The position numbers and the translations under genes are program-made. Of a stretch of 64,000 bases of DNA, positions 6,680-54,946 are shown piece after piece (within the stretch, counting starts at the first letter, position 1; each line of letters begins with the position of its first letter). The notes under the pieces are model-generated. The model searched no databases. It saw only the letters and a program-made list of their open reading frames with translations, and had not been told where the DNA came from. The stretch is from Ylistrum balloti (lineage: Eukaryota): positions 806,001 to 870,000 of the forward strand of contig NW_026781981.1 of the NCBI RefSeq assembly GCF_031769215.1. Direction: 5' to 3'.

Positions 6680-6762
6680 CTGCTTTATTGATAAGATATA
6701 TACAAAGAGAACACCAGGGGTCTTTGGTAACAGCCAGAATATCTCGCGCACAGAGTTAGTAT
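6680..6762 (-). other. GY1 non-coding terminal (3'UTR) exon with conserved motif and AATAAA
   Basis: On the minus strand: acceptor ttttctcctattccag|ATAC at 6763/6762, then TGTGCGCGAG...TGGCTGTTACCAAAGACCCCTG (6752-6715), then AATAAA at 6689-6684. It matches the terminal exons of GY2-4. Confidence 0.75.
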
Positions 6763-7514
6763 CTGGAATAGGAGAAAACATACAACGTATTTTAGTTTTT
6801 TGATGTAGACAAAATTTACAATTGTAATTTGATAAATAAAATCTGATTATTTTACAAATAAAATTAATGATTATTGTCCTATTTACTCAGGTAAGATAAA
6901 TAACATATTAAAAGAATAAACGAGAAAAAGTTGATCCAACAGGTTTGATTTAATGTCCGCTGCATATGGCTTAACATTTTCCGAGAAATTGTCACACTCA
7001 TCAACTTCATTAATGCACATGTCTAATAAATTTCATCACATAATCGTTATCTAGTGAGTTGGTTCATGTCATAATTTTGTATTAAATATGACACTAGTGT
7101 GATATACCCTTGGGCGCCTTTTAGTGTCTGGACCAGCGAGAAATCGATTGTGATGTCAAATATGGCAATGACATTAATTCAGTTTTCGTCTATTGAAAAC
7201 TGTACAACAAAATGGCTGCCTTACGTTAGATTTTGCCCTCCAAATATTAACTTCAAATAAGCAAAACTGTTATGTGATAAGATTTATTGTCAGTTTTATG
7301 ACCCGTCTCGAAGTTTATTTCCATTCAAGCTTTTGTTATCAATTTATCAAAATTAATCCATTTTCATGAAACTCAAAATGTATCGAAGTTAAGGTGAGAT
7401 GGCCAACCATCAGGCATTCAAAATAAATCTTACAATAACGATTAAAATGTAAAAAAAATAATATATGACCGTTGATAACTCACTTTAGAATTCATCTTGA
7501 TCCGATGTCAATAT

Positions 7515-7561
7515 TTAACCAGTGTTGTTGACCAGCAAGGGAAGAAGCACCAGTGCTGCCA
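7515..7561 (-). CDS. GY1 coding exon 3: (L)AALVLLPLLVNNTG*
   Basis: Acceptor tatatttcag|TG at 7562/7561 is phase-compatible with the exon-2 donor. TAA at 7517-7515. A 3'UTR donor AAA|gtgagt follows 31 nt after the stop (7484/7483). Confidence 0.8.
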
Positions 7562-8214
7562 CTGAAATATACGTCTCAGATGCATTAAGTCTCAAACACG
7601 AGATAATGAACAGTTCGTAGTTAGATTATACAGCAATACTTGGGCAGGTGACAGGTACGGAAAATGCTAGGAACAAGTAGGTTGTTATAAAATAGGTATT
7701 GATAGATAGTACAAGATATTTAGAAAGGTAATTAAAGACATTATTACGGAGATTAAGTAGTACTTTGATGAGCGCCTGTCAATACAAATTTAGAATTATT
7801 CATAAGTGAAACAGAAATCAACTCTTTCGTATAGATGGCGCTACAGTAGCCAATGTGTTATAACCTTTGGCCTACGTAACCTTAGGCGATGACCCGAAAT
7901 GTATGGTTCGACGCTCCCTACGCTGTTTTTGTCTATCAGAATGATGGGCAACGGACCTGTCTGTGCTGACATGATTGTATTATTTGTGCACGATTCTTGC
8001 CCTTATCGCTAAGGACAGCATGCGTTCAGTGAGGTAGCCACCAATTACTACAATAAGACCCTGGCTGTTCATTTGGCGATAAATACAGCAAAGAAATAAA
8101 CACACATCAAACTGTTTGATGTCTAGGGACTTGTCACACAGCCTAAGAGTCTAAACTGTTGAAACCTAAAAGGTAACTGATCACATTTTTGTTAATACTT
8201 TTTGCAATACTTAC

Positions 8215-8584
8215 ATAGAAGGTACAGATAGTCATCATTTCCAGCATCAGCAGCCGCAGCAATAGCAGCACCAGGGGGTATTCTAGGTACTGGATAGGGT
8301 AAATACACTACCCTGTTTGGTATACCATGTCCTTTTCCTCCGTAACCCTTTCCATATCCATGACCATATCCTCCGTATCCTTTTCCATATCCGCCATATC
8401 CTCCATATCCGCCTTGTCCTCCATATCCACCGAATCCGCCATAACCATACATGTCATATCCTCCTCCATTTCCCCCTATAATGAAGCCATCGTGACCATA
8501 TCCGCCCCCATACTCGCCACCAAGACAGCAACCCACAGATATGAGAATTGTCAGGATCAGCAGAGCTAGGGTGGCAAATTTCAT
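8215..8584 (-). CDS. GY1 main coding exon: secreted Gly/Tyr-rich protein (138 aa spliced), shell-matrix-like composition
   Basis: MKFATLALLILTILISVGCCLG signal peptide, then GGYGGYG/GKGYG repeats, YLPYPVP and AAAA-DAGNDD. Acceptor gtcaacag|AG at 8592/8591; phase-1 donor CTAT|gtaagt at 8215/8214. Confidence 0.9.
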
Positions 8585-8812
8585 GATTCCTCTGTTGACA
8601 AATTAAAAGAACAAAAGAAAGTTTACATGATATAAAACCAATATAATTGCCTACAAGTAAAATATAATGACGAACATATTTACAATATTGAATTATTTAC
8701 ATTACATTCATTTAGAAAAGAAACCAATTCTAACAAATTATATAGTATAGCATCGTCTTTCATATTAAAGTGTATTAAGAAATGGAAATTCTGTATACTT
8801 ATTTTCACTTAC

Positions 8813-8867
8813 CTCTTTACACCGAAGGGTCCTGAATGTGGGGTATAGATGGTGGTGAGTATATATA
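8813..8867 (-). promoter_or_regulatory. GY1 TATA box and short non-coding exon 1
   Basis: TATATATA at 8867-8860 (minus strand) and donor AAAGAG|gtaagt at 8813/8812, the same layout as GY2-4. Confidence 0.65.
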
Positions 8868-16644: not shown

Positions 16645-16705
16645 TATATAAATACGAGCTTTACTTTCGTCAAATCATCCTCACTTCACCGGCTCATCAG
16701 AACAG
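16645..16705 (+). promoter_or_regulatory. GY2 TATA box and non-coding exon 1
   Basis: TATATAAATA at 16645-16654 and donor AACAG|gtaagt at 16705/16706. The same layout occurs at 21122 and 25703. Confidence 0.75.
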
Positions 16706-17128
16706 GTAAGTTGGATTGGAGATCGAAGATACAAGCATTAATCTAGTAATTTGATCATGCTATAAAATGTATGATTTTCTAAAAAAAAAAAGAAATGAAA
16801 TCCTTATGTATGTCTGGTGACTTATATTTATCGATATTGCAAACATTTCATTGAGTAAATGGTTAATTTTCAATCTTAACCGCAAGGACAATTTTTTCCT
16901 TACTTGATGTTATGTATATCATTAATGAAACTCGAAAGATCCACAAATGTTTCGTTATGTTTTCCCTTCTTTTTTGCTAAATTTTCCTTTAAACACCGAA
17001 TTTCTGACTGCGACTGTTATCCTCGATTTGAATTTTTTTTTCTAGTTTCCTTCTTTCAACATTGGACTTTTTCTAGAATCTGAATGTGTATTCTGAAACA
17101 TGCTATAACTTCATACCTTAGGATCAAC

Positions 17129-17453
17129 ATGATGCATCTTAAGTTTGCCCTTTCAACCATAACTCTTGCCCTTGTCCTTGGCTGTTGTCTCGGAGATGGC
17201 TATGGCAGCTATGGAGGGGGATATGACACGTACGGCGGAGCGATGTACGGAGGATATGGTGGTTACGGAAAAGGTTATGGAGGGGGATATAGCGGATATG
17301 GCGGATATGGCAAAGGATACGGAGGGAAAGGATACGGCCATCAAGAAAGGGCTGTGTATATTCCTTACCCTGTACCCGCTGGACCTGCACCAGGATTTGT
17401 AGCAGGAGCCGCCGCAGCAGAGTACAACGACGATAACAGTAATATACTGTTGT
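17129..17453 (+). CDS. GY2 main coding exon: secreted Gly/Tyr-rich protein (126 aa spliced)
   Basis: Acceptor ccttag|GATCAAC then ATG at 17129. Encodes MMHLKFALSTITLALVLGCCLG + GY repeats + YIPYPVPAGPAP + AGAAAAEYNDD. Phase-1 donor TTGT|gtgagt at 17453/17454. Confidence 0.9.
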
Positions 17454-17668
17454 GTGAGTACAAAACTGACATGTTTAAGATATAACAATTTAGCAAAACG
17501 TATTTCCTACATTGATTCAATGTTTACATAATTATTGCAGATAAGTGTGCTTTCATCATATCATATTGAATTGCTCTTAAAACTACAATGGAACAAGGTT
17601 ATAGTGATCTTTGTCAAGCACGCCTGTTCTTTCAATTGACATAGTTGAACAAATTTTGTTATTTTCAG

Positions 17669-17724
17669 TCGGAGGTGCCCTCTTGCTGCTGCTGCTGATC
17701 AATAATAACAACAACAGTGGATAG
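17669..17724 (+). CDS. GY2 coding exon 3: (F)GGALLLLLLINNNNNSG*
   Basis: Acceptor tttgttattttcag|TC, in frame, TAG at 17722-17724. 3'UTR donor GGAAG|gtagga at 17756/17757. Confidence 0.85.
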
Positions 17725-17870
17725 ACCATTTACCATGTAACGGACTATAACGGAAGGTAGGATGTTAAACTTATCATTTAAATCGAGGGTTTAAGTAAGC
17801 CTATTACCATTAGCGTCTATTTTATGTCATTACATGAACAAGCAACAATAAATTTAATTTTCTGTTTCAG

Positions 17871-17964
17871 ATTGACTTTCTTTGTGCGCGAGTCTCCTTG
17901 GCTGTTACCAAAGACCCCTGTGTGTTTGCGGTCATCATTTTACTTGTTAACATTCCTCAATAAA
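17871..17964 (+). other. GY2 non-coding terminal exon
   Basis: Acceptor ttttctgtttcag|ATTG, conserved motif at 17883-17920, AATAAA at 17959-17964. Confidence 0.75.
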
Positions 17965-20063
17965 GCATGTCATTCCAAACTCTGTAGTTTGTCGGTTTAT
18001 ACAATATTGTTCAAGGTATGATAAGTGGATATGATAATTGTTTTTAAGTATCTTCTGGAGATCGGTGACGAATTTAGTTACAGCTTAAGACAAAATTGAA
18101 TGTTAAAACGACACAAACTAATACTGTCCGTACTCAAAAGTGTCTTCAAAGTGACGTAAATATCACAATATCACACGATTCACAACAAAACCAAACATGT
18201 GAATCTGCTCGTCGTTGGAAACGCAGAAATTTCCACCCACCTGCTGGTGATTTAGAATGTTAAGTTGACTATGACATCAGGTATGGATGAAGGCATACAA
18301 AAAGACTGAAAAGTGTCATCGGTCGAAAAATAACAAAGGATAAACTTTCATGTCAACAGATTTTACTCTAAAACTAAAGTTCGATGAAACTAAGGCAAAA
18401 ACATGAAAGAAAACACTGACATTTTAACGAAATCCAAATTCAAACATAATTATGAAAGTAGGACAAAATCTGAACAAAAAACATTTACATTGAGACCAGA
18501 AAACTATAAAGAAGACCATGCATTCCAGCGGGTTCCCGTCTTCTGCTTCACCAATGACACCTGCAAAATGAACATTTTGGTCGTTCCATGAAGGCAAACT
18601 CAAGTTCCCTAGTGAGATCAAGTTAGATAACAAATGTAACATACAACCTATACTAACTTACATGTCTAACTTCATATCGTGTTAGGAAATAAAATAAGAC
18701 TGAATGAGATAATCACATCAACTAAATCGTGTAAACACCAGAAAATGCTGGATCAATGTTTATACGGATTCCTTGGAAAGGTAACAGAAATACTCGCGTC
18801 TTTTCTATCAGTTCTCTAACGTAGATCGATAAAGCATTATGCACATGTTTCAATATGTTTATAGGATAAATTTATCATTCTTTAAAAAAAAATGCAGTAA
18901 AGGTAGAAAACAATTTCAGCATCAAAGACATAAATTATCCATGCAATTTTAGACAATTTGCAACATAGTATAAATTTCTTTTGATAAATATTTCATAAAA
19001 CATAAAAAAAAATATTTCGCATGAAAATGCACTTGCAAGACACAATTATAAAGAAAAATGCCATAAATTTGCAATTTTCTCCCGTTATATATTTGCAAAT
19101 TTCCCAGAAAAATTGTACCAAAAATCAACTAATTCCATGTGGTGGAACGTTCTCATATCGCCGCCTGAATATATGAGTAACAACCTTGTCTGAAACCCTA
19201 TTATATGCTTTTTATATACAAACTTTTATATTGAATATCAGTGAAATGAGAAAACGATAGAAGACATAAATTTGATCCATGTCAAGATTAATTATTTACC
19301 AATTATATATCTTGACATTCTGACGTCATCGACAAAATAATTAGATTGAAATCATCGCTCCCAAGTAGTTCTATGCAACATTTGACCTGTCGTTATCATT
19401 AACGCTCTTTGTACATTCCAGGACTCCATGTGTACATGTTCTCTTCGTTTATATTTGAGTTTGGATTGTGATTGTTGATGACATGTTGATGTTAAGTAAA
19501 TTCTATCGACAAACAAATATACAGGCAGTTTTGTTTAAATAAATACAATGTTTATTCCATATGATAACTTTCTGTATGATATATTCTGAATGTAAAATTT
19601 TTCATTCTATATTTCTGCGATCAAAACGTATTCGTTTTCTTATTTTGCTTGAAAAGTCTTCAATCTCGACAATGTAATCAATCTTTGTTCCTTTTGGTGT
19701 GGTAAAGGCTCGTTTGAAACAACCTTCAGCAAACGGAGTATGATGTTTTTATTATTCATTAATATTTATTAGGCTGATCAGCTAAGTATAATTAGAATAT
19801 CGAGAGCACGAAGTTTATGTTGTGTATAAAATACATCTTTATATTTCATCAAACACTTTCAATTTAGAAAGAGTTTTATTTGTTGTGCATACAAAACAAT
19901 ATTTCCGTTGAATATTCCTCCTTGCGATAATAACTGCCAACTTCTGATGCAGTTTAGCTCTTGAATGATGATATTGACTATTGTGACAGAAGGAGGTAGA
20001 CCAAGCTTTGACGACCGGCAATCTAAAGTCTCATCAAGTTCCAGTGACTGTAATTTTGATATA

Positions 20064-20934: not shown

Positions 20935-21121
20935 TATTTGATAAAGTGAATTTATTTGAAAATGAAATGCAAGATTGATTTTTTATGCTCTGACCTATCT
21001 GTTACACTATCAGTTACACAATGCTGCTTACTTTGACCGATGCACCATTACTTGTTGTAATATCATGATATAATTACAAACGTAGGTTTCCGGGTGCATT
21101 CATAATTCAGCTTGGATTAGG

Positions 21122-21182
21122 TATATAAATACGAGCTCTACTTTCGTCAAATCATCCTCACTTCATCGTCTCATCTGATCAG
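21122..21182 (+). promoter_or_regulatory. GY3 TATA box and non-coding exon 1
   Basis: TATATAAATA at 21122-21131; donor ATCAG|gtaagt at 21182/21183. Confidence 0.75.
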
Positions 21183-21546
21183 GTAAGTTGGATTGGAGAT
21201 GGAAGATCCAATCATTAGTCAAGTAATGTGATCGTGGTATGAAAATATATCATTTTCTAAAATAGGAATGTGTTGCAAAAAATTAAAAAGTGATCCTAAA
21301 GTATATATTTTGTAACGAACATTAATCGATATTGCAAACTCTTCTTTGTATAAATTGTTAATTTTCTTCTATTAACCTCCAGGGGTAACCTTTACCTTTT
21401 CTAACTTGATGCTATATATATCCTTGATGACAGTGACTGTAACCCTAGATAAAAAAAATGTCTGGTTTCTTCCTGTAAACGTTGAATTTCTTCTAGAATC
21501 TCTGTGTATTCTGAAACAAGCTATAACTTCATACTTCAGGATCAAC

Positions 21547-21871
21547 ATGAATTATCTTAAGTTTGCCCTTTCGACCATAACTCTTGCCCTTGTCCTTGGC
21601 TGTTGTCTTGGAAATGGCTATGGTGGCTATGGAGGAGGATATGACATGTACGGCGGAGCGATGTATGGAGGATATGGTGGTTACGGAAAAGGCTATGGAG
21701 GGGGATATAGCGGATATGGCGGACATGGCAAAGGATACGGAGGGAAAGGATACGGCCATCAAGAAAGGGCTCTGTATATTCCTTACCCTGTACCCGCTGG
21801 ACCTGCACCAGGATTTGTAGCAGGAGCCGCCGCAGCAGAGTACAACGACGACAACAGTTATCTTTTGTTGT
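21547..21871 (+). CDS. GY3 main coding exon: secreted Gly/Tyr-rich protein (126 aa spliced)
   Basis: Acceptor cttcag|G at 21539/21540 and ATG at 21547 (MNYLKFALSTITLALVLGCCLG). Phase-1 donor at 21871/21872. Close paralog of GY2. Confidence 0.9.
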
Positions 21872-22120
21872 GTGAGTACTAATACAGCATAACATGTCTT
21901 AGATATAATGTTTCAGGGGAACGGATTTCCTCCATTGAATCAATGTTTACATAATCACTACAACAAAGTGTGCTTCCATCATGTTCTTGAATATAACACA
22001 CATATACATATCACATTGTATTGCCCTCGAAACAACAACAAAAGAAAACGTCATAGTGATCTATGTCAACCACGCCTGTTCTTCAATTGACATAGTTGCG
22101 ACATATTTTGTTATTTTCAG

Positions 22121-22176
22121 TCGGAGGTGCCCTCTTGTTGTTGCTGCTGATCAATAATAACAACAACAGTGGATAG
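22121..22176 (+). CDS. GY3 coding exon 3: (F)GGALLLLLLINNNNNSG*
   Basis: Acceptor ttattttcag|TC at 22120/22121; TAG at 22174-22176; 3'UTR donor at 22208/22209. Confidence 0.85.
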
Positions 22177-22322
22177 ACCATTTACCATGTAACGGACTAC
22201 AACGGAAGGTAGGATGTTAAACTTATCATTTAAATCGAGGGTTAAAATAAACCCATTGTCATTTTAGTCTATTTTATGTCATTTCATGAACTAACAACAA
22301 TATTTTTAATTTTCTGTTTCAG

Positions 22323-22417
22323 ATTGATTTTCTTTGTGCGCGAGACTACTTGGCTGTTACCAAAGACCCCTGTGTGTTTGCGGTCATCATTTTACTTATA
22401 TATCATTCCTGAATAAA
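22323..22417 (+). other. GY3 non-coding terminal exon
   Basis: Acceptor tttctgtttcag|ATTG, motif at 22335-22372, AATAAA at 22412-22417. Confidence 0.75.
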
Positions 22418-24299
22418 GCATATCATTCCAAACTCTATAGTTTGTCTGTTTATACAATATTGTTCAAGGTATAAAAAGTAAATATAATTTCTTTGCTTTA
22501 TGTATCTTCTGGAGATCGGTCACAAATTAAGTTAAAATGTAAGACAAAGTCGAGTGTTAAAACGACACAAATTCATGAGCAAATTTCCTTCATACATTAA
22601 CGAATACTTTTCGTACTCAAAAGTGTCTTCAAAGTGACGTAAATATCACATCAGAGGATACATAACAAAACCTAACATGTGAATCTGCTCGTCGTTGGAA
22701 ACACAGAAGTTCGACTCACCTGCTAGTGCTTAAGAGTGTAAAGTTGACTATGAAATCAGGTTTGAACGCGGGCATATGAAAAGTCTGAGAAGTGTTTCTT
22801 CATGTGGATCATCTGTCGAAAACAACAAAGGATATACTTACATATCAACAGATTAAAACCAAAACTGAAATTTGATGAAACTAGAGGCAAAGACAAAAAA
22901 GAAAAAAACGACAAGTTAACGAAATCCTAATTCAAACATAACTATGAAAGCAGGATAAAATCTGAGACTAGAGAAAAATAAAGAAGAATAAGACCAGACC
23001 AGGCACTCCAGAAGGATTCCCATTTTCCGCTTTATCAATTACACCTGAAACGTAAATTTTGGTCGTTTCAAGAAGATAAACTCAGATTCCCTTGTGAGAT
23101 CAAGTTAAATAACAAATGTAACAAAACATCCATTCTAACAAAAGGAATCTAAGTTCGTATCGCATAAGGAACTAAAATGATTCTGAATAAGGCGATTATG
23201 ATTAACAATAAACTTCGCCATAATCTTCATCAATCTTTCAAAACTCTTGAAAGTAAGCCAGTAAGTATATGTGCTGTCCACATATTTTAAGCAAATCGAG
23301 ATAATTGATTAAGCCCTTGAAAATCACATTGACTACAACTAGTAAACACCAGAGAATGCTGAATCTATGTTTATACGAATTCCTTGGAAATGTAACGGAA
23401 ATTCCTCACGTCTTTATCTCTAACGTAGATCAATAAAGCATCGGACATTATGGACATGTTTCACTATGTTTATTCATCATTCTTTATTTTAAAAAATGCA
23501 GTAAAGGTAGAAAACGACAGAAGACATGAATGTGATCCATGTCCAGATTAAGCATTTGACCAATTAAATATCTTGACAATCTGAAATTATCGACAAAGTA
23601 ATTAAATTGAATTGTCGTTCGTTCCCAAGTAATTCTTTGTAACATTTGACTTGTCTTTGTCATAAACAAGCCTGTCTCCTATTCATTCTTTGTAAATAAA
23701 TAGGGTATGTACTGCTTTAAAATCGTTTCATCTCATCAAATAATACTCATACATTGGTTTCAAGTTGTACAAAGAAAGTTTTCATGAGTACTGCTATCTT
23801 ACCTTTACGGTATCAAGGTAAGAAAATGCAATATTTTAACAATAAACAGAAGAATTTATAATACTTTCATCGTATTCCTAAGTTTTTTAAGACTTGCTTA
23901 TCAAGTCGGTTTTGACAAATTTGATTGTCAGGAACAGATTGACCAGTTTCATATTTTATAACTTGACTCCATGATGACTGTAAAGTGAAATAAATAATTT
24001 TTTCTATTTCACATCTGTATTTATATAGAGTCTGTTCACTTGAAATATCATAATTTTCATTCTTATGAGCTGATTTTTAAATCAATTTTGAGATCGCTCA
24101 ATCGAAGTAAATAAAGAAATTAAACAAAAATATTTAGAATTGAGACATTTTCTGAGGGCAAATTTTCGAAAAGTACATATATCTATACAAGAAAAAAAAT
24201 CAAAATGAAATAAATTTTGCTAATAGTCATATTTACAAGAAATCTAATGACCATATCAATCGTTATATACCCACAAGAACTGAAAATAAAAAACGCAAC

Positions 24300-25702: not shown

Positions 25703-25763
25703 TATATAAATACGAGCTCTACTTTCGTCAAATCATCCTCACTTCATCGTCTCATCTGATCAG
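25703..25763 (+). promoter_or_regulatory. GY4 TATA box and non-coding exon 1
   Basis: TATATAAATA at 25703-25712; donor ATCAG|gtaagt at 25763/25764. Confidence 0.75.
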
Positions 25764-26128
25764 GTAAGTTGGATCGGAGATCGAAGATACAAGCATTAAT
25801 CTAGTAATGTGATCGTGGTATGAAAATAATTCATTTTCTAAAATAGAAATGTGTTGCAAAAATTAAAAAGTGATCCTAAAGTATATATTTTGTAACGAAC
25901 ATTAATCGATATTGCAAACTCTTCTTTGTGTAAATTGTTAATTTTCTTTTATTAACCTTCAGGGGTAACCTTTACCTTTTCTAACTTGATGTTATGTATT
26001 TTCTTGATGACAGGGACTGTTACCCTCGATATAAAAAAAAAATGTCTGGTTTCTTCCTGTAAACATTGAATTTCTTTTAGAATCTGTGTATTCTGAAACA
26101 AGGTATAACTTCATACTTCAGGATCAGC

Positions 26129-26462
26129 ATGTATTATCTTAAGTTTGCCCTTTCGACCATAACTCTTGCCCTTGTCCTTGGCTGTTGTCTTGGAAATGGC
26201 TATGGTGGCTATGGAGGCTATGGAGGAGGATATGACATGTACGGCGGAGCGATGTACGGAGGATATGGTGGTTACGGAAAAGGCTATGGAGGAGGATATG
26301 GCGGATATGGCGGACATGGCAAAGGATACGGAGGGAAAGGACACGGTCATCAAGAAAGAGCTCTGTATATTCCTTACCCTGTACCCGCTGGACCTGCACC
26401 AGGATTTGTAGCAGGAGCCGCCGCAGCAGAGTACAACGACGATAACAGTTATCTTTTGTTGT
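26129..26462 (+). CDS. GY4 main coding exon: secreted Gly/Tyr-rich protein (128 aa spliced)
   Basis: ATG at 26129 (MYYLKFALSTITLALVLGCCLG), with one extra YGG unit relative to GY3. Phase-1 donor TTGT|gtgagt at 26462/26463. Confidence 0.9.
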
Positions 26463-26468
26463 GTGAGT

Positions 26469-26471
<3 letters not shown>

Positions 26472-26556
<85 letters not shown>
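26472..26556. repeat. (CT)n microsatellite, ~42 units, in GY4 intron 2
   Basis: Pure CT run, absent from the homologous introns of GY2 and GY3. Confidence 0.97.
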
Positions 26557-26558
<2 letters not shown>

Positions 26559-26666
26559 ATATTGTGTTGCTCTCAAAGCAACAATTAAACAAGCTTGTAT
26601 TGCGATCTATGTCAACCACGGCTATTCTTACAATTAACAAAGTTGTACATCTTTTGTTATTTTCAG

Positions 26667-26719
26667 TCGGAGGTGCCCTCTTGTTACTGCTGCTGTTGAG
26701 TAATAACAACATTGGATAG
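26667..26719 (+). CDS. GY4 coding exon 3: (F)GGALLLLLLLSNNNIG*
   Basis: Acceptor ttgttattttcag|TC at 26666/26667; TAG at 26717-26719. Confidence 0.85.
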
Positions 26720-26865
26720 ACCATTTACCATGCAACGGACTACAACGGAAGTTAGGATGTTAAAGTTGTCATTTAAATCGAGGTTTAAAATAATCCCATT
26801 ACCATCGGCGTCTATTTTATGTCATTTCATGAACAAACAACAATATTTTATATTCTCTGTTACAG

Positions 26866-26959
26866 ATTTATTTTCTTTGTGCGCGAGACTCCTTGGCTGT
26901 TACCAAAAACCCCTGTTTGTTTGCTGTCAGCATTTTACTTGTTAACATTCCTAAATAAA
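26866..26959 (+). other. GY4 non-coding terminal exon
   Basis: Acceptor ttctctgttacag|ATTT, motif TGTGCGCGAG..TGGCTGTTACCAAAAACCCCTG at 26878-26915, AATAAA at 26954-26959. Confidence 0.7.
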
Positions 26960-30000: not shown

Positions 30001-30150
30001 ATTGTTGTTGGTAAATGAAGGCATTCATGGTTTGTATTTGTTACAAGTAAAGGTATATTGATTTATATATGGTACCTGTAATATGTTTATATCTAAATAT
30101 TCTTTACAGACAATTATTAATCATTTATACATATTCAAGTTTTTAATAGG

Positions 30151-30279
30151 ATGGACATTAAAATTGCAACCATAGCTCTCCCGTCCTTGATCCTTCCCGT
30201 AATTTTCGGATCCTGTCTGGGAGATGGTGTCTATGGCTTCTACAGTTGCTTAGGGTATGGGGGATACAGTTTTGATTAA
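30151..30279 (+). pseudogene. GY5, truncated Gly/Tyr-rich paralog (42 codons + stop)
   Basis: Acceptor ttttaatag|G immediately before ATG at 30151. Encodes MDIKIATIALPSLILPVIFGSCLGDGVYGFYSCLGYGGYSFD*, where GSCLGDG matches GCCLGDG of GY2. No Pro-rich linker or exon 3 was found downstream. Confidence 0.65.
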
Positions 30280-31115: not shown

Positions 31116-31349
31116 CTGAAAATAAAAATAAAATAGTAATCAGAAAACAATAGAGTGAATCCGTATATATACTGCTTGTATTATTTAATCTTAAATTAAA
31201 CTTCTTACAACATACATTCTCAAGCAATGCATAAATCGTTTGATGTCAATACTTCATTATTTGTAATAATCGTTGTTGTAACTAGGAAAATCATGACACA
31301 CTTACAAATCCAGTGTGGTGCCAGTTATTTACTTGTCGGTATCCATGTT

Positions 31350-31399
31350 CTATCCAAAAGCATTAGTCGCCAGCAAGGGGAGGAAAAATAGGGCTATAA
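31350..31399 (-). CDS. GY6 coding exon 3: (L)IALFFLPLLATNAFG*
   Basis: Acceptor gtttttcctttcag|TT at 31400/31399; TAG at 31352-31350. Clear homology to GY1 exon 3 (LPLL). In frame only if the exon-2 frameshift is corrected. Confidence 0.7.
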
Positions 31400-31579
31400 C
31401 TGAAAGGAAAAACAACTCTTACTTATTCGATATATCTTCATGTAAAAAACTCCCTGCCATTTTTAAATCGTCGCATTAAATATTTGCAAGGTTTACTGTT
31501 GGAAATATCAAGGAAAATTGTTATGCGTGAAATAGGGATATCAACCTATGTTTGACTGCTGATATCGCAAATATCACAA

Positions 31580-31960
31580 CCATATTTAAGTAATGTATGA
31601 CTTCTAACACCGTAAGCAAGGCATGTTTGAATACTGTCACCGTATGCAGGCCATACATGATTTTTGACATCATAAGTAGGTCACATATTGATCGTGAGTA
31701 GGTCATGTAGAATCACCAACTCCAAATGTAATTATTCTGACCTCTAACACAGTATATAGGTCATTTATGACTACTGATGTCATAGTCACGTGGTATATAA
31801 CTGCTGGTATCATACATGTAAGTAGGTCATCTATTGACACAGTGAGTAGGTCATGTATGACTACTGATGCCATAAGTACGCTTTATATGATTTCTGTTAT
31901 CATAAGTAGGCCATGCATGACTTTCGAAACCATGATGAGGTTATGTAGGACCATTGTCAT
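31580..31960. repeat. Degenerate tandem repeat (cataagtaggtcatgtatgact-like) in GY6 intron 2
   Basis: Recurring agtaggtcat/ccat and gtatgact motifs. Confidence 0.6.
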
Positions 31961-31970
31961 GTGTACTCAC

Positions 31971-32204
31971 GGACGATCGCACGGTCCCTGTAGGTCGTAG
32001 ATGGCGGTGGTACCGGAGGCATATTGATATACTGGTAGTCGTAGTTCTGTCCATATCCGCGCTGTAGGCACTGCCGCCATTATAGCCTTTGTTATACATA
32101 TTGTTTCCATATCCACTATATTGGTTAGTATACCCATCGCAATATCCAGTCGCAATACAAAACACCAGAACCAAAAACAGGACTATGACAGTGGCAAACC
32201 TCAT
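31971..32204 (-). pseudogene. GY6 main exon, Gly/Tyr-rich paralog with a 1-nt frameshift at ~32059-32060 (pseudogene or sequence error)
   Basis: Reads MRFATVIVLFLVLVFCIATGYCDGYTNQYSGYGNNMYNKGYNGGSAYS, then AGC-GC-GGA. Restoring one base gives GGYGQNYDYQYINMPPVPPPSTTYRDRAIV and a phase-1 donor C|gtgagt at 31971/31970. Confidence 0.75.
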
Positions 32205-36530: not shown

Positions 36531-36778
36531 ATTTGAATTGCGTATGATTTCTTTTATGACTTAATACCAGCAATTGTTTTCAAATAAGTATTATAAAAAG
36601 TGAGATACATGTTTAACTACAATAACAGATTTTGTGATAAATCTTAAAAATGAATTGTGCTTATCAAGTTATCCTTATATCATGACCACAGACGATTGAA
36701 AAGGAAATGAATGTTACATGTTCCATGCGTGTTAGATGTTACGATACCTTTGATAACACCAGTCGTTCAGCTTTGACT

Positions 36779-36840
36779 TTAATTCCTCGTTAAAGCAAAG
36801 AGAAATGCGAACGCTGAAATCAATGAAAACTGTTTAATAA
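36779..36840 (-). CDS. GY7 coding exon 3: (A)FAFLFALTRN* from acceptor 36813, or (V)IKQFSLISAFAFLFALTRN* from acceptor 36840
   Basis: Two in-frame cag acceptors 27 nt apart; TAA at 36781-36779; candidate 3'UTR donor AAAG|gtatcg 31 nt after the stop (36748/36747). Confidence 0.6.
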
Positions 36841-37110
36841 CTGAAGCAACAAGAAGAGAAGTCACAAGGATTTTCGACAGTATATTTAATTATTCAAATG
36901 TTTCTCTTTTTTCTTTATCACCGTAGGTCACACTTTTACACAAGTAGCAAAATGACTCCAAATATTATCATTAACAGGGACGAGAAGTTCCGAGACCAAC
37001 CTAACATTGATGTTCAGCCAGTATTCTAAAATAATTATCAGATATTGAAACCTAAAGCTAGCTTTCAGTTAATGATATTTAAAGGCAATTCGTATTATTT
37101 TCATTCTTAC

Positions 37111-37436
37111 CTCCTATAGCTGCAAGAAGCCCTATTCCGGAGCCATAAGGGGAGTCCGTATCCCGTCCCTGAAGTGTGAAGTCAGGAAGAGAAGCACCAG
37201 ACGATGGTAATATTGTCTGTGAATTGTAAGTGATCTGAGTACCTTTTCCGTTGCCACCTTTACCGCCGTATCCCTTGTAGCCAACATTACCACCATATCC
37301 GCTGTAGCTGCCCTTGCCACCGTATCCACTGTAGTAACCGCCTTTGCCACTGTTGCCACCGTAGCCACTGCTACCACCGTATCCAAAGGAGCCACAAACC
37401 ACAACCAGGATGCTGGATAAAATTACTATCCTAAAC
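37111..37436 (-). CDS. GY7 main coding exon: secreted Gly/Tyr/Lys-rich protein (120-129 aa spliced)
   Basis: Acceptor ctcatgtcttag|G at 37437/37436. Encodes (M)FRIVILSSILVVVCGSFG signal peptide + YGG/GGKG repeats. Phase-1 donor GGAG|gtaaga at 37111/37110. Confidence 0.8.
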
Positions 37437-47519: not shown

Positions 47520-47595
47520 ATTATTTAATGACAAAAATACACAGGGGTTTTTGGTATTAACTGTAAGTGACGTTGTTGACCTCTTGCGCGAAAAC
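47520..47595 (-). other. GY8 non-coding terminal exon
   Basis: Acceptor tttttattcatttgtag|GTTT at 47596/47595, then GCGCAAGAGG and TACCAAAAACCCCTGTGT (47556-47539), then ATTAAA at 47529-47524. Confidence 0.7.
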
Positions 47596-47868
47596 CTACA
47601 AATGAATAAAAAAAATCATTTTAAACAAGGAGAGACTTTTTTGTATGGTTCATAATTACTGTAACCACTATTATGATAACTATACACGAAGTTAATCACG
47701 GAGTCAACGTTATGGATCTTCTGAAAATATCATAAGCATATTCAGTCATAAAGATCGGGTTCTGAATATCTTTAGAATACATTCATAGTAATTCAACAGT
47801 TAACAAAAGCATTTGACGTAATAAGACATAAATAACTTACCTATATACAAATCTGTTTGTTGTTTTAT

Positions 47869-47918
47869 CTAACCAGTGTTATTGTTGTTGGATAAGAGAG
47901 CCAGTAACAACACGGCTC
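47869..47918 (-). CDS. GY8 coding exon 3: (G)AVLLLALLSNNNNTG*
   Basis: Acceptor aatgtttcag|GA at 47919/47918; TAG at 47871-47869; 3'UTR donor ATAG|gtaagt 28 nt after the stop (47841/47840). Confidence 0.8.
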
Positions 47919-48208
47919 CTGAAACATTGATATCATCAAATATTATAGTACAAACGGAGAATAGAAAAAAAATATGTGAAAACGTAATGATCATATTATC
48001 TACACAGGCGTATAGGTCAGCGGACAGGCGTATAGGTCAGCTGACAGGCGAGGTCAAGGAAAAGCTAGTCTTGTAATATATCACAGTCTTAGCCAGGTTT
48101 GTAACATTTGTTTTAATGATTAGAAATTAAGAGCGACTCGTTCGACTTAAGAGAGGGAAATCATAAGTATATGTGTGTGATTGATACGGGATTGGAAGTA
48201 GTGCCTAC

Positions 48209-48537
48209 CTGCCAAAAGGAAAAAAATGTTGTTGTCGTTGCCGCCGAATGCTCCGCCTCCTCCATACAGTCCTCCGAGTGCTGCCAAAGGAAGATCTCCT
48301 GGTTCTGGGGATGCAACAGGATACAGTATGGTTGGAAAACCATATCCTCCTTGTCCTTGTCCATATCCGCTATATCCGCCATACCCCCCTCCTTTTCCGT
48401 ATCCTCCGTATCCACCATAGTAAGGTGCTACCATACCTCCTTTTCCGTAACCGCTGTACCTACTCATACAATAATGTCGGTGATCAAGAGTATTCGTACA
48501 TACTTTTGTCTAACAATATTAAACCAGTTGTTATGAC
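48209..48537 (-). pseudogene. GY8 main exon: Gly/Tyr-rich body intact, signal-peptide region decayed (pseudogene or leaderless variant starting at ATG 48467)
   Basis: Acceptor ccctatgtcag|GTCA at 48538/48537 is homologous to GY9 cag|GTCA. The first ~70 nt have stops in all frames. The frame is open from 48467 (MSRYSGYGKGG...GNDNNIFFLLA) to the phase-1 donor GCAG|gtaggc at 48209/48208. Confidence 0.7.
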
Positions 48538-52696: not shown

Positions 52697-52871
52697 AGAA
52701 AGATGATTTCCTCAGGGGGGATGATGAACCATGAGGAAGTTGATTGAATTTTATCCTGCCATGATTGGTTTAAGGTCAGGGTATAAAAAGTACGACCTCC
52801 ACATCTAGTAAACCAGAATCCCTGAACAGGACGGGATCCTCATCTACATCACAGGGTCCTGTATCATAGGG
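52697..52871 (+). promoter_or_regulatory. GY9 promoter and non-coding exon 1
   Basis: AGAAAGATGAT at 52697-52707, ATTGG at 52764-52768, TATAAAA at 52782-52788, first donor AGGG|gtaagt at 52871/52872. Confidence 0.7.
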
Positions 52872-53542
52872 GTAAGTAAAACTCATCAATATCTCATGGT
52901 TCTGTAGCATAGGGGTAAGTAAGCGGTTAGGTTAAATCTATAACTTATAATCCTGTAGGGTAGGGGTAAGTAAAACTTATTTACATCTCAGGGTCCTGTG
53001 GCGTACGGTTAGGTTAAATCTGTAACTTATAGTCCTGTAGCTTAGGGATAAGTAATATTTATCTACGCCCTAGGTCCGTGTAGACAATTTTGATAAAATT
53101 ATAAAGTATGTTCCTACCCAGTACAGAATTAATGATATGTAGATATAAATAAAATGTCAATTTCTTTTAACGTTTTTTGCAGCAACGTAAGTTCCATGTG
53201 TAACCTTCGGTGTTGGGTTATACAGCGGGTGTTCTGTAAAATCTTGGTTTTATCATTGATGGAAACATGTTAATAATGTATCATTAGGTGGGGTTAGTAA
53301 TATATAACAATCATGATATCCGTTTATGCTTTTGAAAATATGTATAGTGGGAAGTTTCAGAATAATGTAACATCGAATCATGGTCATGATGTAGGGAAGG
53401 CGATACATGGTGATGTTAATAATTACTATAGTATATGTAAAACTTTTACGACGTATGTAAAATGGTGACTATCCTTATTATGATTTTATCGTCTGAATTG
53501 ATAAATTCTTTATTAACAAACCTTATAATGGCAGGTCACGAG

Positions 53543-53921
53543 ATGCGTTTGCTACTCATAGCAATCGCCTCCGGGGCGATCCTCATGGGATTGTTCACGG
53601 CGGTCAATTGTGATGGTGGGTACAGCGGGTACGGGTACGGCGGGTACAATGATTATGACATGTATAGTGGACAAGGGTACGGAGGATATATGTATCCAGG
53701 ATACGGTGGGCAAGGATACGGATATGGTGGAAAAGGATATATAGGATACTCGGGACAGGGATACAGCGGTTACGAAGGAAAGGGAGGAAAAGGTGGTGGC
53801 TATTTTGGCGGTAATGCATTGAGTGTACCTTATGGTCTACGTGTTCCGCCAATCGCCCCACCGCTCGGCTTAGACCAAAGTGGACTCTATGGTGCTAACG
53901 ACTCCTCGCTCTTTACTGTCA
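53543..53921 (+). CDS. GY9 main coding exon: secreted Gly/Tyr-rich protein (145 aa spliced)
   Basis: Acceptor atggcag|GTCACGAG then ATG at 53543. Encodes MRLLLIAIASGAILMGLFTAVNC signal + GYG/GQGY/GGKG repeats + VPPIAPP. Phase-1 donor GTCA|gtaagt at 53921/53922. Confidence 0.9.
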
Positions 53922-54174
53922 GTAAGTATTTGTATCAAAACTAAGGCACGTTATAGGTTAGATGGTTTCAATTAATCTGTATTTATCCAAATGTTTAATT
54001 GTTAGCAAGAGTATGTTAGAAATAATTGAAAGTAACACCGCGCCTGATAATGAAAACCGCATATCAAATAAATAAGCGTTGCTTTTAACTGATGAAGCAC
54101 AAGACCAAATAAACTTGAAATGTAAAATTTCATTGGATTCTGTTACTTATATAACATGTCGTTTCTTCTTGCAG

Positions 54175-54233
54175 TTGCTATCGGATTCCTGTTCTGGTTG
54201 ATTGCTAGTGGTGCCAGGAACAGGACTGGTTAG
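54175..54233 (+). CDS. GY9 coding exon 3: (I)AIGFLFWLIASGARNRTG*
   Basis: Acceptor tttcttcttgcag|TT at 54174/54175; TAG at 54231-54233; 3'UTR donor ATAT|gtaagt 34 nt after the stop (54267/54268). Confidence 0.85.
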
Positions 54234-54858
54234 ATACGGATAACAGCTACAATACCTTTGTATATATGTAAGTATGATCGTTCACAACCAAATATAATTC
54301 AAAATAGCATGCACACAGCATATACATTTTTTTTTTACATAAATATGTGAAGTGGAAACGCAGATAGAACGTCCATTCACTGCCTCTTCCCACCGTGTAT
54401 TAGATGTTGATTGTGTTTCGCTAGGTTTTGTTGATCCGAAAATTTGCCAAAAATTGAAGTAGTTAGATAATAATAAATACATTAATTGTAAAAAAATTCA
54501 AATAAGTTTCCATGCTATATTACCTCTTTATAAAAACCATCAACCAAAAGTAACTATCCGACAATATTCACAGATACAATTTATACATTTCGTCACATTT
54601 TCATCTCCGTAGTGTGCCAATCGTAAATTGTCGATATTTTTTGATGCGTGTTTCTTAGTTTATATTCCAAGTCAATTTAGAAAAGAATGAAACATGAACA
54701 TGCAACATCCAATTATGATAAATTTATCATGATGTAAAAACTTGGTTATGGATTTTATTAGCCGTTACCATTTGAATAAGAGCCACTTTATAAATATAAA
54801 GTCTATTCGATATACGTAAATGAATACAAGCTGTGTAAATGTATTTTTGCTTTTTCAG

Positions 54859-54946
54859 CTTTAAGCGCAAGAGGACCAAGCCGTCATACACGTCACCAAA
54901 ATGCCCCGTTATATATTATTATGATGTTATGTATTTTTGAAATAAA
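54859..54946 (+). other. GY9 non-coding terminal exon
   Basis: Acceptor ttttgctttttcag|CTTT, GCGCAAGAGG at 54865-54874, CACCAAAATGCCCC at 54894-54907, AATAAA at 54941-54946. Confidence 0.7.

What the first reader, a model, noticed from the sequence alone, without database searches (positions are those of the whole stretch)
6680..54946. Cluster of nine Gly/Tyr-rich secretory-protein paralogs with one hidden four-exon blueprint
The ORF track shows only scattered GY-rich ORFs, each running into an intron. Manual splicing recovers a shared plan in eight loci: signal peptide + GY/GKG repeats + Pro-rich then acidic linker, an invariant phase-1 intron, a tiny hydrophobic C-terminal exon, and an intron just after the stop. 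Orientation runs -,+,+,+,+,-,-,-,+. The cluster holds recent near-identical copies (GY2-4), old divergent copies (GY1, 6, 7, 8, 9) and decaying copies (GY5, 6, 8), which is birth-and-death evolution seen in one window. GY-rich shell-matrix proteins are established in bivalves (shematrins, KRMPs, prisilkin-39, prismalin-14). Shematrins end in basic RKKKY/RRKKY-type tails, which these spliced products lack. The family may therefore be distinct, for example periostracum, shell organic matrix or byssal/egg-coat components (inference).
Basis: partly seen in the sequence, partly recalled or inferred. Interest (0 to 1): 0.85.

Follow-up and report, generated by a model that had tools for sequence, protein, structure and literature searches.

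The report
Scallop Gly/Tyr-rich tail-anchored protein cluster
A 48-kb stretch of the saucer scallop genome holds nine tandem copies (five intact, four decayed) of a small glycine/tyrosine-rich secreted-protein gene with a fixed four-exon plan and a greasy, probably membrane-anchoring tail; oysters and clams have the same family, which nobody has characterised and whose function is still only inferred.

Summary
The window is Ylistrum balloti JAUZWB010000149.1:806001-870000. It carries nine Gly/Tyr-rich loci in the stated orientation (-,+,+,+,+,-,-,-,+).

Eight loci share one plan:
- a TATA box and a short non-coding exon 1;
- exon 2, starting 7-8 nt before the ATG, encoding a signal peptide, GY/KGYG repeats, a YxPYPVP/Pro-Ala linker and an acidic NDD motif;
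- a phase-1 GT donor;
- a micro-exon encoding 12-18 hydrophobic residues followed by an Asn-rich end, usually closing in Gly;
- a second donor 17-34 nt after the stop;
- a roughly 100-nt 3'UTR exon with AATAAA.

No RNA data could be obtained, because the only run found was DNA. Three other lines support the plan. All four blocks are conserved with the syntenic Pecten maximus ortholog. Public gene calls for GY2, GY3, GY4 and GY9 use the same exon 2/3 junctions. The same phase-1 intron and tail exon occur in a second scallop cluster, an oyster and a clam.

GY1, 2, 3, 4 and 9 look intact (dN/dS 0.2-0.4). GY5, 6, 7 and 8 are decayed.

The proteins lack the basic shematrin/KRMP tail, and a profile search recovered no Pinctada shematrin. 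The tail looks most like a GPI-attachment signal. Function (a tyrosine cross-linkable surface or matrix protein, probably mantle) is inference. The scan has also noted another GY cluster elsewhere in this genome.

The parts
8813..8867 (-). GY1 TATA box (8867) and short non-coding exon 1, with donor GAG|GTAAGT after 8813
   Evidence: This block is 75% conserved with Pecten maximus L001 9483-9612, including the TATATATA box and the donor.
8215..8591 (-). GY1 exon 2. The ATG is at 8584. It encodes the signal peptide, GY repeats, the YLPYPVP linker and NDD, and ends in the phase-1 donor T|GTAAGT.
   Evidence: Conserved with the Pecten ortholog.
7484..7561 (-). GY1 exon 3: tail (L)AALVLLPLLVNNTG, stop, 31 nt of UTR, then donor GTGAGT
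6665..6762 (-). GY1 exon 4 (3'UTR): conserved core GGCTGTTACCAAAGACCCCTG at 6715-6735 and AATAAA at 6684-6689
   Evidence: 81% identical to Pecten L001 11543-11640, with acceptor and poly(A) signal conserved.
16645..17985 (+). GY2 whole gene: TATA 16645; exon 1 ends 16705; exon 2 17122-17453 (ATG 17129); exon 3 17669-17756 (stop ends 17724); exon 4 from 17871 (AATAAA 17959)
   Evidence: The public gene call of 126 aa uses the same junction.
21122..22437 (+). GY3 whole gene: TATA 21122; exon 1 ends 21182; exon 2 21540-21871 (ATG 21547); exon 3 22121-22208 (stop ends 22176); exon 4 from 22323 (AATAAA 22412)
   Evidence: Same calls as GY2. This is XP_060064266.1 'pupal cuticle protein 36-like', whose public start at 21427 lies inside intron 1.
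25703..26980 (+). GY4 whole gene: TATA 25703; exon 1 ends 25763; exon 2 26122-26462 (ATG 26129); exon 3 26667-26750 (stop ends 26719; the post-stop donor is weakened to GTTAGG); exon 4 from 26866 (AATAAA 26954). Intron 2 holds a (CT)n run.
   Evidence: Public gene call of 128 aa.
30150..30279 (+). GY5 remnant: acceptor, ATG at 30151, signal peptide and about 19 GY-like residues, then a stop. No tail exon was found.
   Evidence: Not called in the public annotation.
31333..32204 (-). GY6. Exon 2 is 32204-31971 and carries a frameshift after ...GYNGGSAYS. The ancestral frame keeps YINMPPVPPP and a phase-1 donor C|GTGAGT. Exon 3 is 31399-31333 (tail IALFFLPLLATNAFG, stop 31350-31352).
   Evidence: Not called in the public annotation.
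36745..37436 (-). GY7. Exon 2 is 37436-37111, with AGG where the paralogs have ATG and a phase-1 donor G|GTAAGA. Exon 3 starts at 36840, and its divergent tail ends ...FAFLFALTRN.
   Evidence: No TATA/exon 1 was found.
47544..48467 (-). GY8. Exon 2 remnant 48467-48209 has no signal peptide and no 5' acceptor. It keeps the phase-1 donor G|GTAGGC, exon 3 at 47918-47841 (tail GAVLLLALLSNNNNTG) and a degraded exon-4 core at 47544-47558.
52782..54966 (+). GY9: candidate TATA 52782 with exon 1 ending 52871 (tentative); exon 2 53535-53921 (ATG 53543); exon 3 54175-54267 (stop ends 54233; tail IAIGFLFWLIASGARNRTG); exon 4 from 54859 (AATAAA 54941)
   Evidence: The public gene call of 145 aa at 53543-54233 is identical to this model.

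Best explanation
The region is a tandem birth-and-death cluster of a gene family that is old and widespread in bivalves. The family encodes small (about 100-145 aa) proteins of the secretory pathway.

Each intact gene (GY1, 2, 3, 4, 9) has a TATA promoter and four exons. The product has:
- a cleavable signal peptide;
- a disordered region of about 70 residues with roughly 27-30% Gly and 12-14% Tyr, carrying KGYG repeats;
- a conserved (V/L)Y(I/L)PYPVP and Pro/Ala linker;
- a stretch of small and acidic residues (AAAA..NDD);
- a C-terminal tail of 12-18 hydrophobic residues, often with an internal Pro, followed by 4-8 Asn-rich residues ending in Gly, usually without Lys or Arg.

The tail is split by an invariant phase-1 intron and finished by a micro-exon.

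The most likely mechanism is as follows, and it is inferred. The tail acts as a GPI-attachment signal, or less probably as a weak membrane anchor. The mature GY-rich polypeptide is then displayed on the apical surface of a secretory epithelium. There its Tyr and Lys residues allow self-association and oxidative (tyrosinase or peroxidase) cross-linking into an insoluble extracellular layer, most plausibly in mantle-made shell or periostracum matrix.

Shown here: the gene structure, its conservation, purifying selection, the decay of four copies, and the sequence features of the tail. Inferred: GPI attachment, cross-linking, and the tissue.
For: Loci and plan.

Gene models:
- Four conserved blocks (TATA + exon 1, exon 2, exon 3, exon 4 + poly(A) signal) align with the Pecten maximus ortholog. 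That ortholog is syntenic through the neighbouring gene.
- Public gene calls use the same exon 2/3 junctions for GY2, GY3, GY4 and GY9.
- An independent DNA run covers 21149-26900 evenly at about 11x with about 1% SNPs, so the tandem copies are not an assembly artefact.

Selection and history:
- dN/dS is 0.24-0.40 among GY2-4 and 0.20 for GY1 versus Pecten. CDS identity exceeds intron identity.
- The tree groups GY1 with Pecten, so the GY1 versus GY2-4 split predates those genera.

Family breadth:
- The profile search finds only five proteins, four from scallops and one of unknown source, all with the same layout.
- A wider word-based profile search adds Argopecten, Crassostrea virginica (tail ...ALLLGLLALTPILLNNNNSG), Saccostrea and Mercenaria.
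- The phase-1 intron and tail exon are present in a second Ylistrum cluster, Mizuhopecten, Saccostrea and Mercenaria DNA.

Tail properties in 15 family members:
- the hydrophobic core is 12-15 residues in 13 members (18 in GY9, 10 in the decayed GY7);
- mean Kyte-Doolittle hydrophobicity is 2.2-3.3;
- 12 of 15 have no K or R after the core;
- 14 of 15 end in Gly.
Small residues (for example A-A-A in GY1-4 and A-G-A in Pecten) lie about 10 residues upstream of the hydrophobic core, as in GPI omega sites (my own reading of the sequences).
Against: - There is no RNA evidence for any junction in this species; the only run found was DNA.
- No GPI predictor was available, so the omega site was assigned by eye and fits GY9 and some subfamily-2 members less well.
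- A conserved polar Asn-rich...Gly end after the hydrophobic stretch is unusual for a GPI signal that is discarded. It hints at some other constraint.
- There are no expression, proteome or localisation data, so mantle or shell is a guess from composition and from analogy with other GY-rich bivalve proteins.
- No paper mentions any of the accessions.
- GY-rich small secreted proteins are also immune effectors in other phyla.
Confidence: 0.5

Rival explanations
1. The proteins are type I single-pass membrane proteins. The hydrophobic tail is a permanent transmembrane anchor with a tiny Asn-rich cytoplasmic stub, and the GY-rich ectodomain stays on the cell as a surface coat or adhesion layer.
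For: An N-terminal signal peptide plus a single C-terminal hydrophobic segment. GY9 has an 18-residue core followed by RNRTG. The polar end is conserved, which would make sense if it is retained in the mature protein.
Against: In 13 of 15 members the core is only 12-15 residues, usually with an internal Pro. That is short for a stable helix across the bilayer. Twelve of 15 have no Lys or Arg on the presumed cytoplasmic side.
Confidence: 0.2
2. They are inducible immune or antimicrobial Gly/Tyr-rich peptides, analogous to the nematode NLP/CNC peptides and arthropod glycine-rich AMPs. In this reading the rapid gene turnover in the cluster reflects host-pathogen pressure.
For: The proteins are small and secreted, carry GYGG(K)G repeats, have TATA promoters, and sit in a tandem cluster with birth and death of copies. 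The oyster relative was auto-named after C. elegans F12A10.7. That gene is mentioned in a paper on stress resistance and innate immunity in long-lived C. elegans mutants (I did not read the passage).
Against: dN/dS of 0.2-0.4 shows purifying rather than diversifying selection. The non-repeat linker and the hydrophobic tail are conserved across bivalve orders, and known GY-rich AMPs have neither. There are no dibasic processing sites. The naming rests on composition only.
Confidence: 0.12
3. They are ordinary freely secreted shell-matrix proteins of the shematrin/KRMP kind. The tail exon would be a sorting or aggregation module, or would be removed, and would have no anchoring role.
For: The GY-rich composition and signal peptide resemble shematrins, KRMPs and prisilkin. 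The Saccostrea relative is labelled 'shematrin-like protein 2'. Knock-down of a Chlamys farreri 'Shematrin' disturbs foliated shell, as cited in PMC8194122.
Against: The defining basic C-terminal signature (RKKKY and similar) is absent. No Pinctada shematrin is recovered by the profile search. The Saccostrea label sits on an intron read-through model. I could not read the Chlamys farreri sequence.
Confidence: 0.15

Closest known systems
Shematrins (Pinctada; Yano et al. 2006, as described in PMC3896809)
   Same: Signal peptide, Gly/Tyr-rich low-complexity repeats, multigene family with lineage-specific expansion, and bivalve-specific.
   Different: Shematrins end in RKKKY, RRKKY, RRRKY or similar. 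These proteins instead end in a hydrophobic stretch plus an Asn-rich...Gly tail encoded by its own exon. They are also smaller (100-145 aa). No Pinctada shematrin was recovered by HMM search.
KRMPs (lysine-rich matrix proteins, Pinctada)
   Same: Small size (about 10 kDa) and a Gly/Tyr-rich domain thought to cross-link.
   Different: KRMPs have a Lys/Trp-rich basic domain directly after the signal peptide and an RKYKY/RPKKY/RRKY end (PMC3896809). Both are absent here.
GPI-anchored small low-complexity surface proteins (e.g. vertebrate Shadoo and the PrP N-terminal region; own knowledge)
   Same: A signal peptide, a Gly-rich disordered region, a stretch of small residues, a polar spacer and a short C-terminal hydrophobic signal, in a protein of about 130-150 aa.
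   Different: There is no sequence relationship. GPI attachment is only inferred here. The Asn-rich...Gly end after the hydrophobic stretch is atypical.
Nematode NLP/CNC and arthropod glycine-rich antimicrobial peptides (own knowledge)
   Same: Clustered genes encoding small secreted peptides with GYGG-type repeats.
   Different: Those lack the YxPYPVP linker and the hydrophobic tail. The family here is under purifying selection and is conserved across bivalve orders.
Periostracin, the Gly/Tyr/DOPA-rich periostracum precursor of Mytilus (Waite et al. 1979; own knowledge)
   Same: The amino-acid composition suggests a tyrosine or DOPA cross-linked structural role in a mantle secretion.
   Different: Periostracin is known by composition only, so no sequence comparison is possible and no link has been tested.

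Membership tests
Shematrin family | N-terminal signal peptide | tested here: met
   A hydrophobic leader ending ...CCLG| is present in GY1-4 and a similar one in GY9. This was read by eye; no SignalP run was possible.
Shematrin family | Gly/Tyr-rich GnY-type repeat domain | tested here: met
   26-30% Gly and 9-14% Tyr over whole pre-proteins (12-14% Tyr in the intact copies), with KGYGG repeats.
Shematrin family | C-terminal basic signature RKKKY/RRKKY/RRRKY/IRRKK/PRKKY (PMC3896809) | tested here: not met
   Every spliced product ends in a hydrophobic stretch plus an Asn-rich...Gly end. A ...CKYCKKY end appears only if the GY1 intron is read through.
Shematrin family | Detectable sequence homology to Pinctada shematrins | tested here: not met
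   The profile hmmsearch of 1.84 billion representatives gave 5 hits: four from scallops and one (P0005) of unknown ENA source. None is a named Pinctada shematrin. The word-based profile search listed none at E<=1 within its length limits.
Shematrin family | Mantle-edge expression and presence in shell matrix | not testable with these tools
   The only sequencing run offered was DNA. No proteome was searchable.
KRMP family | Lys/Trp-rich basic domain after the signal peptide, and an RKYKY/RPKKY/RRKY end | tested here: not met
   The mature N-terminus begins directly with GYGG repeats, and the tail is hydrophobic.
GPI-anchored proteins | N-terminal signal peptide plus a C-terminal hydrophobic segment too short for a stable transmembrane helix, without a basic cytoplasmic flank | tested here: met
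   The core is 12-15 residues in 13 of 15 family members, and 12 of 15 have no K or R after it.
GPI-anchored proteins | Omega site of small residues (omega, omega+2) followed by a polar spacer of about 5-10 residues | tested here: inconclusive
   A-A-A / A-G-A lies about 10 residues before the core, with spacer EYNDDNS or DAGNDD, in GY1-4 and Pecten. The fit is less clear in GY9 and in oyster. This was assigned by eye, since no predictor was available.
GPI-anchored proteins | Biochemical release by PI-PLC, or a glycolipid-modified C-terminus | not testable with these tools
   This needs an experiment.
Bivalve 'GY-rich, tail-exon' family (defined here: Pecten XP_033732283.1, Mizuhopecten XP_021362355.1, Ylistrum XP_060069708.1, C. 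virginica F12A10.7-like, Mercenaria CV1-like) | Signal peptide, GY repeats, (V/L)Y.P.PVP linker, small/acidic stretch, hydrophobic core and Asn-rich...Gly end, with a phase-1 intron at the start of the hydrophobic core | tested here: met
   Met by GY1, 2, 3, 4 and 9, and in decayed form by GY6, GY7 and GY8. The same intron phase is present in L001, L003, L004, L009 and L010.

The most novel reading that the evidence does not exclude
These genes represent an ancient, uncharacterised family shared by the scallop, oyster and venerid-clam lineages. In this reading the products are GPI-tethered, tyrosine-rich proteins that form a membrane-bound template on which mantle cells assemble periostracum or shell matrix. 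The invariant phase-1 intron before the tail exon would serve as a switch: splicing gives the anchored form, and intron retention gives a soluble tail-less form that stops a few codons later. The family could also be the stock from which tail-less GY-rich matrix proteins such as shematrins and KRMPs arose.
Probability: 0.2. Interest if true: 0.65.

Novelty: new variant of a known kind. Interest (0 to 1): 0.42.

Why it matters
GY-rich low-complexity proteins are among the most highly expressed and least understood products of the bivalve mantle. They are usually treated as fast-evolving, lineage-specific and impossible to align. This family differs in three ways:
- it has a non-repetitive signature, the YxPYPVP linker plus the tail exon;
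- its intron-exon plan is conserved between scallops, oysters and a venerid clam, so orthology can be traced;
- its tail predicts membrane tethering, which would be a new idea for how such proteins are laid down.

There are also practical points. Public names ('pupal cuticle protein 36-like', 'keratin-associated protein 21-1-like', 'sulfur globule protein CV1-like', 'shematrin-like protein 2') are artefacts of composition. At least two public models are wrong: the GY3 start, and the Saccostrea intron read-through. The cluster is also a clean small example of birth-and-death evolution, with five live and four dead copies in 48 kb.

Tried and rejected
- **RNA support.** The look-up of sequencing runs offered one run. 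Laid on 20950-26900, it showed flat ~11x depth over introns and exons and no splice joints, so it is genomic DNA from another individual. Junction usage remains untested.
- **Pfam.** No family matched any GY product.
- **Homolog search limited to the C-terminal 55 residues of the Pecten protein.** It found only the query itself.
- **Protein atlas.** It gave only composition-driven look-alikes (arthropod cuticle or chorion proteins, nematode peptides) and a low-confidence, disordered model.
- **Hairpin in the conserved 3'UTR core.** The predicted structure is weak (-5 kcal/mol) with no compensatory changes, so I rejected a structured element.
- **Logan and ENA relatives (P0005, P0013, P0020).** They are unspliced genomic or metagenome contigs and give no transcript evidence.
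- **Literature.** No paper cites the accessions. F12A10.7 hits concern C. elegans only. PfY2 is unrelated. Lin et al. 2014 (Chlamys farreri Shematrin) and McDougall et al. 2013 are not held, so I could not compare their sequences or gene structures.
- **Early stops after the exon-2 donor as evidence for a designed soluble isoform.** I rejected this. Stops 2-20 codons into a 33% GC intron are what chance gives, about 1 per 13 codons by my own estimate from base composition.
- **Chance or artefact.** Rejected on the shuffles, the independent DNA run, dN/dS and cross-species conservation.

Full report
**Identity of the window.** A search with the GY3 exon-2 peptide returned a 100% identical protein of Ylistrum balloti (saucer scallop), XP_060064266.1. 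Locus look-ups place the window at JAUZWB010000149.1:806001-870000 of assembly GCA_031769215.1.

**Checking the observation.** A six-frame scan for stop-free 30-residue windows with at least 9 Gly and at least 5 Tyr finds seven loci, and none in 20 shuffles. tblastn with the paralogs adds a short remnant at 30151-30279 (GY5) and a weaker copy at 31971-32204 (GY6).

In GY1, 2, 3, 4, 7, 8 and 9 the long ORF runs through a GT donor that splits a codon after its first base: T|GTAAGT, T|GTGAGT, G|GTAAGA, G|GTAGGC or A|GTAAGT. The donor always sits where the sequence turns hydrophobic after an N-D-(D/N/S) motif.

Downstream by 200-650 nt, behind a polypyrimidine tract and a CAG or TAG acceptor, each locus has a tiny exon. 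In phase 1 it encodes a Leu-rich stretch, an Asn-rich end and a stop:
- GY1: AALVLLPLLVNNTG
- GY2 and GY3: GGALLLLLLINNNNNSG
- GY4: GGALLLLLLLSNNNIG
- GY8: GAVLLLALLSNNNNTG
- GY9: IAIGFLFWLIASGARNRTG
- GY6: IALFFLPLLATNAFG
- GY7: a divergent tail ending TRN

A further GT donor follows the stop by 17-34 nt in all eight loci. An AG acceptor lies 7-8 nt before the ATG in the intact copies, and 1-4 nt before the start position in GY5 and GY7.

**The four-exon plan without RNA.** The only run offered was laid on 20950-26900 and turned out to be genomic DNA from another individual. It showed even ~11x depth over introns and exons, about 1% SNPs and no splice joints. It confirms that the tandem copies are real but says nothing about splicing. 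I therefore used comparative evidence.

The Pecten maximus relative XP_033732283.1 (P0002) was fetched with 10 kb of flank (L001). Sensitive blastn of the GY1 locus against it gives exactly four conserved blocks. On alignment they are:
- a TATATATA box, about 45 nt, then GAG|GTAAGT (exon 1);
- exon 2;
- exon 3;
- a block that opens with a CAG acceptor and ends in AATAAA or ATTAAA (exon 4).

The Pecten coding junction is also phase 1. The neighbouring gene at window 602-4040 is conserved next to the Pecten gene, so the two are positional orthologs.

GY2-4 have their own TATATAAATA box, a short exon 1 and a CAG|GTAAGT donor. They also have an exon 4 with acceptor, conserved core and AATAAA.

Public gene calls on this contig already give GY2 (126 aa), GY3 (166 aa), GY4 (128 aa) and GY9 (145 aa, 53543-54233) with exactly my exon 2/3 junctions. 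The blueprint is therefore real but not hidden. The GY3 public model starts 120 nt too far upstream, at an ATG inside intron 1.

**State of the copies.** GY1, 2, 3, 4 and 9 are intact. The other four are not:
- GY5 stops after 42 codons and has no tail exon.
- GY6 has a frameshift in exon 2, although its ancestral frame still leads into a phase-1 donor and a tail exon.
- GY7 has AGG where the paralogs have ATG, no recognisable promoter or exon 1, and an odd tail.
- GY8 has lost the signal peptide and its 5' end.

GY5 and GY6 are not called in the public annotation.

Nei-Gojobori estimates give dS 0.10-0.16 and dN/dS 0.24-0.40 among GY2-4. GY1 versus Pecten gives dN/dS 0.20, and GY1 or GY3 versus GY9 gives 0.33-0.41. 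Coding identity exceeds intron identity. In a maximum-likelihood tree GY2-4 form one clade (100/99) and GY1 pairs with the Pecten gene (80/83). The GY1 versus GY2-4 duplication is therefore older than the two genera.

**The wider family.** Pfam finds nothing. A profile of three members, run with HMMER over 1.84 billion representatives, found only five proteins:
- the Pecten protein;
- the Ylistrum query protein;
- a second Ylistrum protein, 'sulfur globule protein CV1-like';
- a Mizuhopecten 'glycine-rich protein-like';
- an unnamed ENA protein.

A word-indexed profile search added Argopecten irradians, Mizuhopecten KP79_PYT04331, Saccostrea 'shematrin-like protein 2', Crassostrea virginica 'F12A10.7-like' and Mercenaria 'sulfur globule protein CV1-like'.

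All share the same layout: signal peptide, GY/KGYG repeats, a (V/L)Y(I/V)P.PVP or RAPYAVP linker, a small and acidic stretch (NDD, GGDDGIFGGNG, GNEE), a hydrophobic core and an Asn-rich...Gly end. The C. virginica tail, for example, is ...GIFGGNGALLLGLLALTPILLNNNNSG.

The DNA shows the same phase-1 intron and a separate tail exon in:
- a second three-gene Ylistrum cluster (L003);
- Mizuhopecten (L004);
- Saccostrea (L009), where the public single-exon model is an intron read-through and the real tail exon lies about 170 nt downstream;
- Mercenaria (L010).

The plan therefore predates the split between the scallop/oyster lineages and venerid clams. The public names are composition artefacts.

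**Relation to shematrins and KRMPs.** The literature defines shematrins by GnY repeats plus a C-terminal RKKKY, RRKKY, RRRKY, IRRKK or PRKKY signature. It defines KRMPs by a Lys/Trp domain after the signal peptide plus an RKYKY-type end (PMC3896809). Neither end nor the KRMP basic domain is present here, and no Pinctada shematrin appears among the HMM hits.

A 'Shematrin' cloned from the scallop Chlamys farreri gives disordered foliated shell on knock-down (Lin et al. 2014, cited in PMC8194122). I could not obtain that paper or its sequence, so its relation to this family is open. Zebra mussel 'shematrin-like' GnY proteins are among the most mantle-specific transcripts, yet they cannot be aligned to Pinctada shematrins (PMC9210306). 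This shows how loosely the name is used.

**How it probably works.** The following are shown directly:
- a TATA-driven, compact gene;
- a product that enters the secretory pathway;
- a disordered Gly/Tyr/Lys-rich body (26-30% Gly and 9-14% Tyr over the pre-protein);
- a tail whose hydrophobic core is 12-15 residues in 13 of 15 family members, often with an internal Pro;
- no Lys or Arg after the core in 12 of 15 members, with 4-8 Asn-rich residues ending in Gly in 14 of 15.

That core is short for a membrane-spanning helix and lacks a positive cytoplasmic flank. About 10 residues upstream lie runs of small residues (A-A-A in GY1-4, A-G-A in Pecten), followed by a polar spacer (EYNDDNS, DAGNDD). 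Together with the Pro/Ala-rich flexible segment before them, this is the classical layout of a GPI-attachment signal. That comparison rests on established knowledge of such signals and was assigned by eye, because no predictor was available.

My best reading has these steps: the tail is exchanged for a GPI anchor; the mature GY-rich peptide of about 80-95 residues is displayed on an apical cell surface; and Tyr and Lys side chains allow self-association and oxidative cross-linking into an insoluble layer. The layer is most plausibly mantle-made shell or periostracum matrix. This is inference.

The rivals are a true type I membrane anchor, a freely secreted shematrin-like matrix protein, and an immune GY-rich peptide. 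Purifying selection, the conserved non-repeat modules and the absence of processing sites speak against the immune reading.

The conserved Asn-rich...Gly end is not explained by a discarded GPI signal. It remains an open point.

**Extra detail.** Exon 4 carries a 21-nt core, GGCTGTTACCAAAGACCCCTG. It is identical in GY1, GY2 and GY3, although synonymous sites between GY1 and GY3 are saturated. It has one mismatch in GY4 and in Pecten, and weaker versions in GY8 and GY9. RNAalifold gives no covariation for a hairpin. It looks like a sequence-specific 3'UTR element, such as a miRNA or RNA-binding-protein site.

**Verdict.** Novelty is moderate. This is a new variant of the known class of bivalve GY-rich secretory proteins, distinguished by an anchor-like tail exon and a deeply conserved gene plan. 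The scan's notes list another GY-rich cluster elsewhere in this genome (s1-268571). I independently found a second cluster on contig JAUZWB010000164.1, which may be the same one.

Noticed in passing
window 6715-6735 (-), 17900-17920, 22352-22372, 26895-26915 (+); L001 11576-11596: A 21-nt core in the 3'UTR exon, GGCTGTTACCAAAGACCCCTG, is identical in GY1, GY2 and GY3, whose synonymous sites are saturated. It has one mismatch in GY4 and in Pecten maximus. Together with an upstream CTTTGTGCGCGAGA box, it looks like a conserved post-transcriptional control element. No hairpin covariation was found.
   Followed up: partly
window 21427-21546: The public protein XP_060064266.1 (166 aa) begins at an in-frame ATG 120 nt upstream of the signal-peptide Met. 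That ATG lies inside what the paralogs and Pecten show to be intron 1, so the first 40 residues are probably not real.
   Followed up: partly
L009 10001-10620 (Saccostrea cucullata JAVVLV010001169.1): The public 'shematrin-like protein 2' model is a single-exon read-through of the phase-1 intron. A proper tail exon encoding ...ALLFLIPLLFNNNNTTG lies about 170 nt downstream.
   Followed up: partly
L004 13775-13846, 16270-16341, 18845-18916 (Mizuhopecten yessoensis NEDP02004270.1): Three further copies of the tail exon (...FALFVLPLLLNGSTGHLG) sit in roughly 2.5-kb tandem units downstream of the XP_021362355.1 gene, and none has an exon 2. They may be relics of partial duplication or alternative terminal exons.
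   Followed up: no
L003 4177-18862 (Ylistrum balloti JAUZWB010000164.1): A second tandem cluster holds three genes (131, 127 and 134 aa) of a sister subfamily, with an acidic DDFFDDD start, KGYG repeats and the tail LLFLLLLLPFLLNNNGGLLG. It has the same phase-1 intron.
   Followed up: partly
window 10745-15822: A 5-kb satellite of about 100 copies of a 51-bp unit (85% matches) lies between GY1 and GY2. It produces the long repetitive pseudo-ORFs in the ORF list.
   Followed up: partly
window 24731-24929: This short segment between GY3 and GY4 has a word depth of about 3667 in the DNA run, against about 11 elsewhere, with many loose ends. It is a very high-copy repeat or transposon fragment.
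   Followed up: no
window 60620-61831 (+): An intronless 403-aa Cys-loop ligand-gated ion-channel subunit (Neur_chan_LBD 1e-41 plus Neur_chan_memb). It is already called in the public annotation.
   Followed up: partly
window 751-829 and 2274-2362; L001 16838-18054: The gene at 602-4040, flagged separately by the scan as s1-254262, has conserved exonic blocks at the equivalent position beside the Pecten maximus GY gene. It is therefore a real, syntenic neighbour.
   Followed up: partly
window 8192-8214 (-): Reading through the GY1 donor gives ...LLCKYCKKY*, a basic KKY end that superficially recalls the shematrin and KRMP RKKKY-type tails. This is probably coincidence arising from the T|GTAAGTAT donor consensus, and I did not test it.
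   Followed up: no
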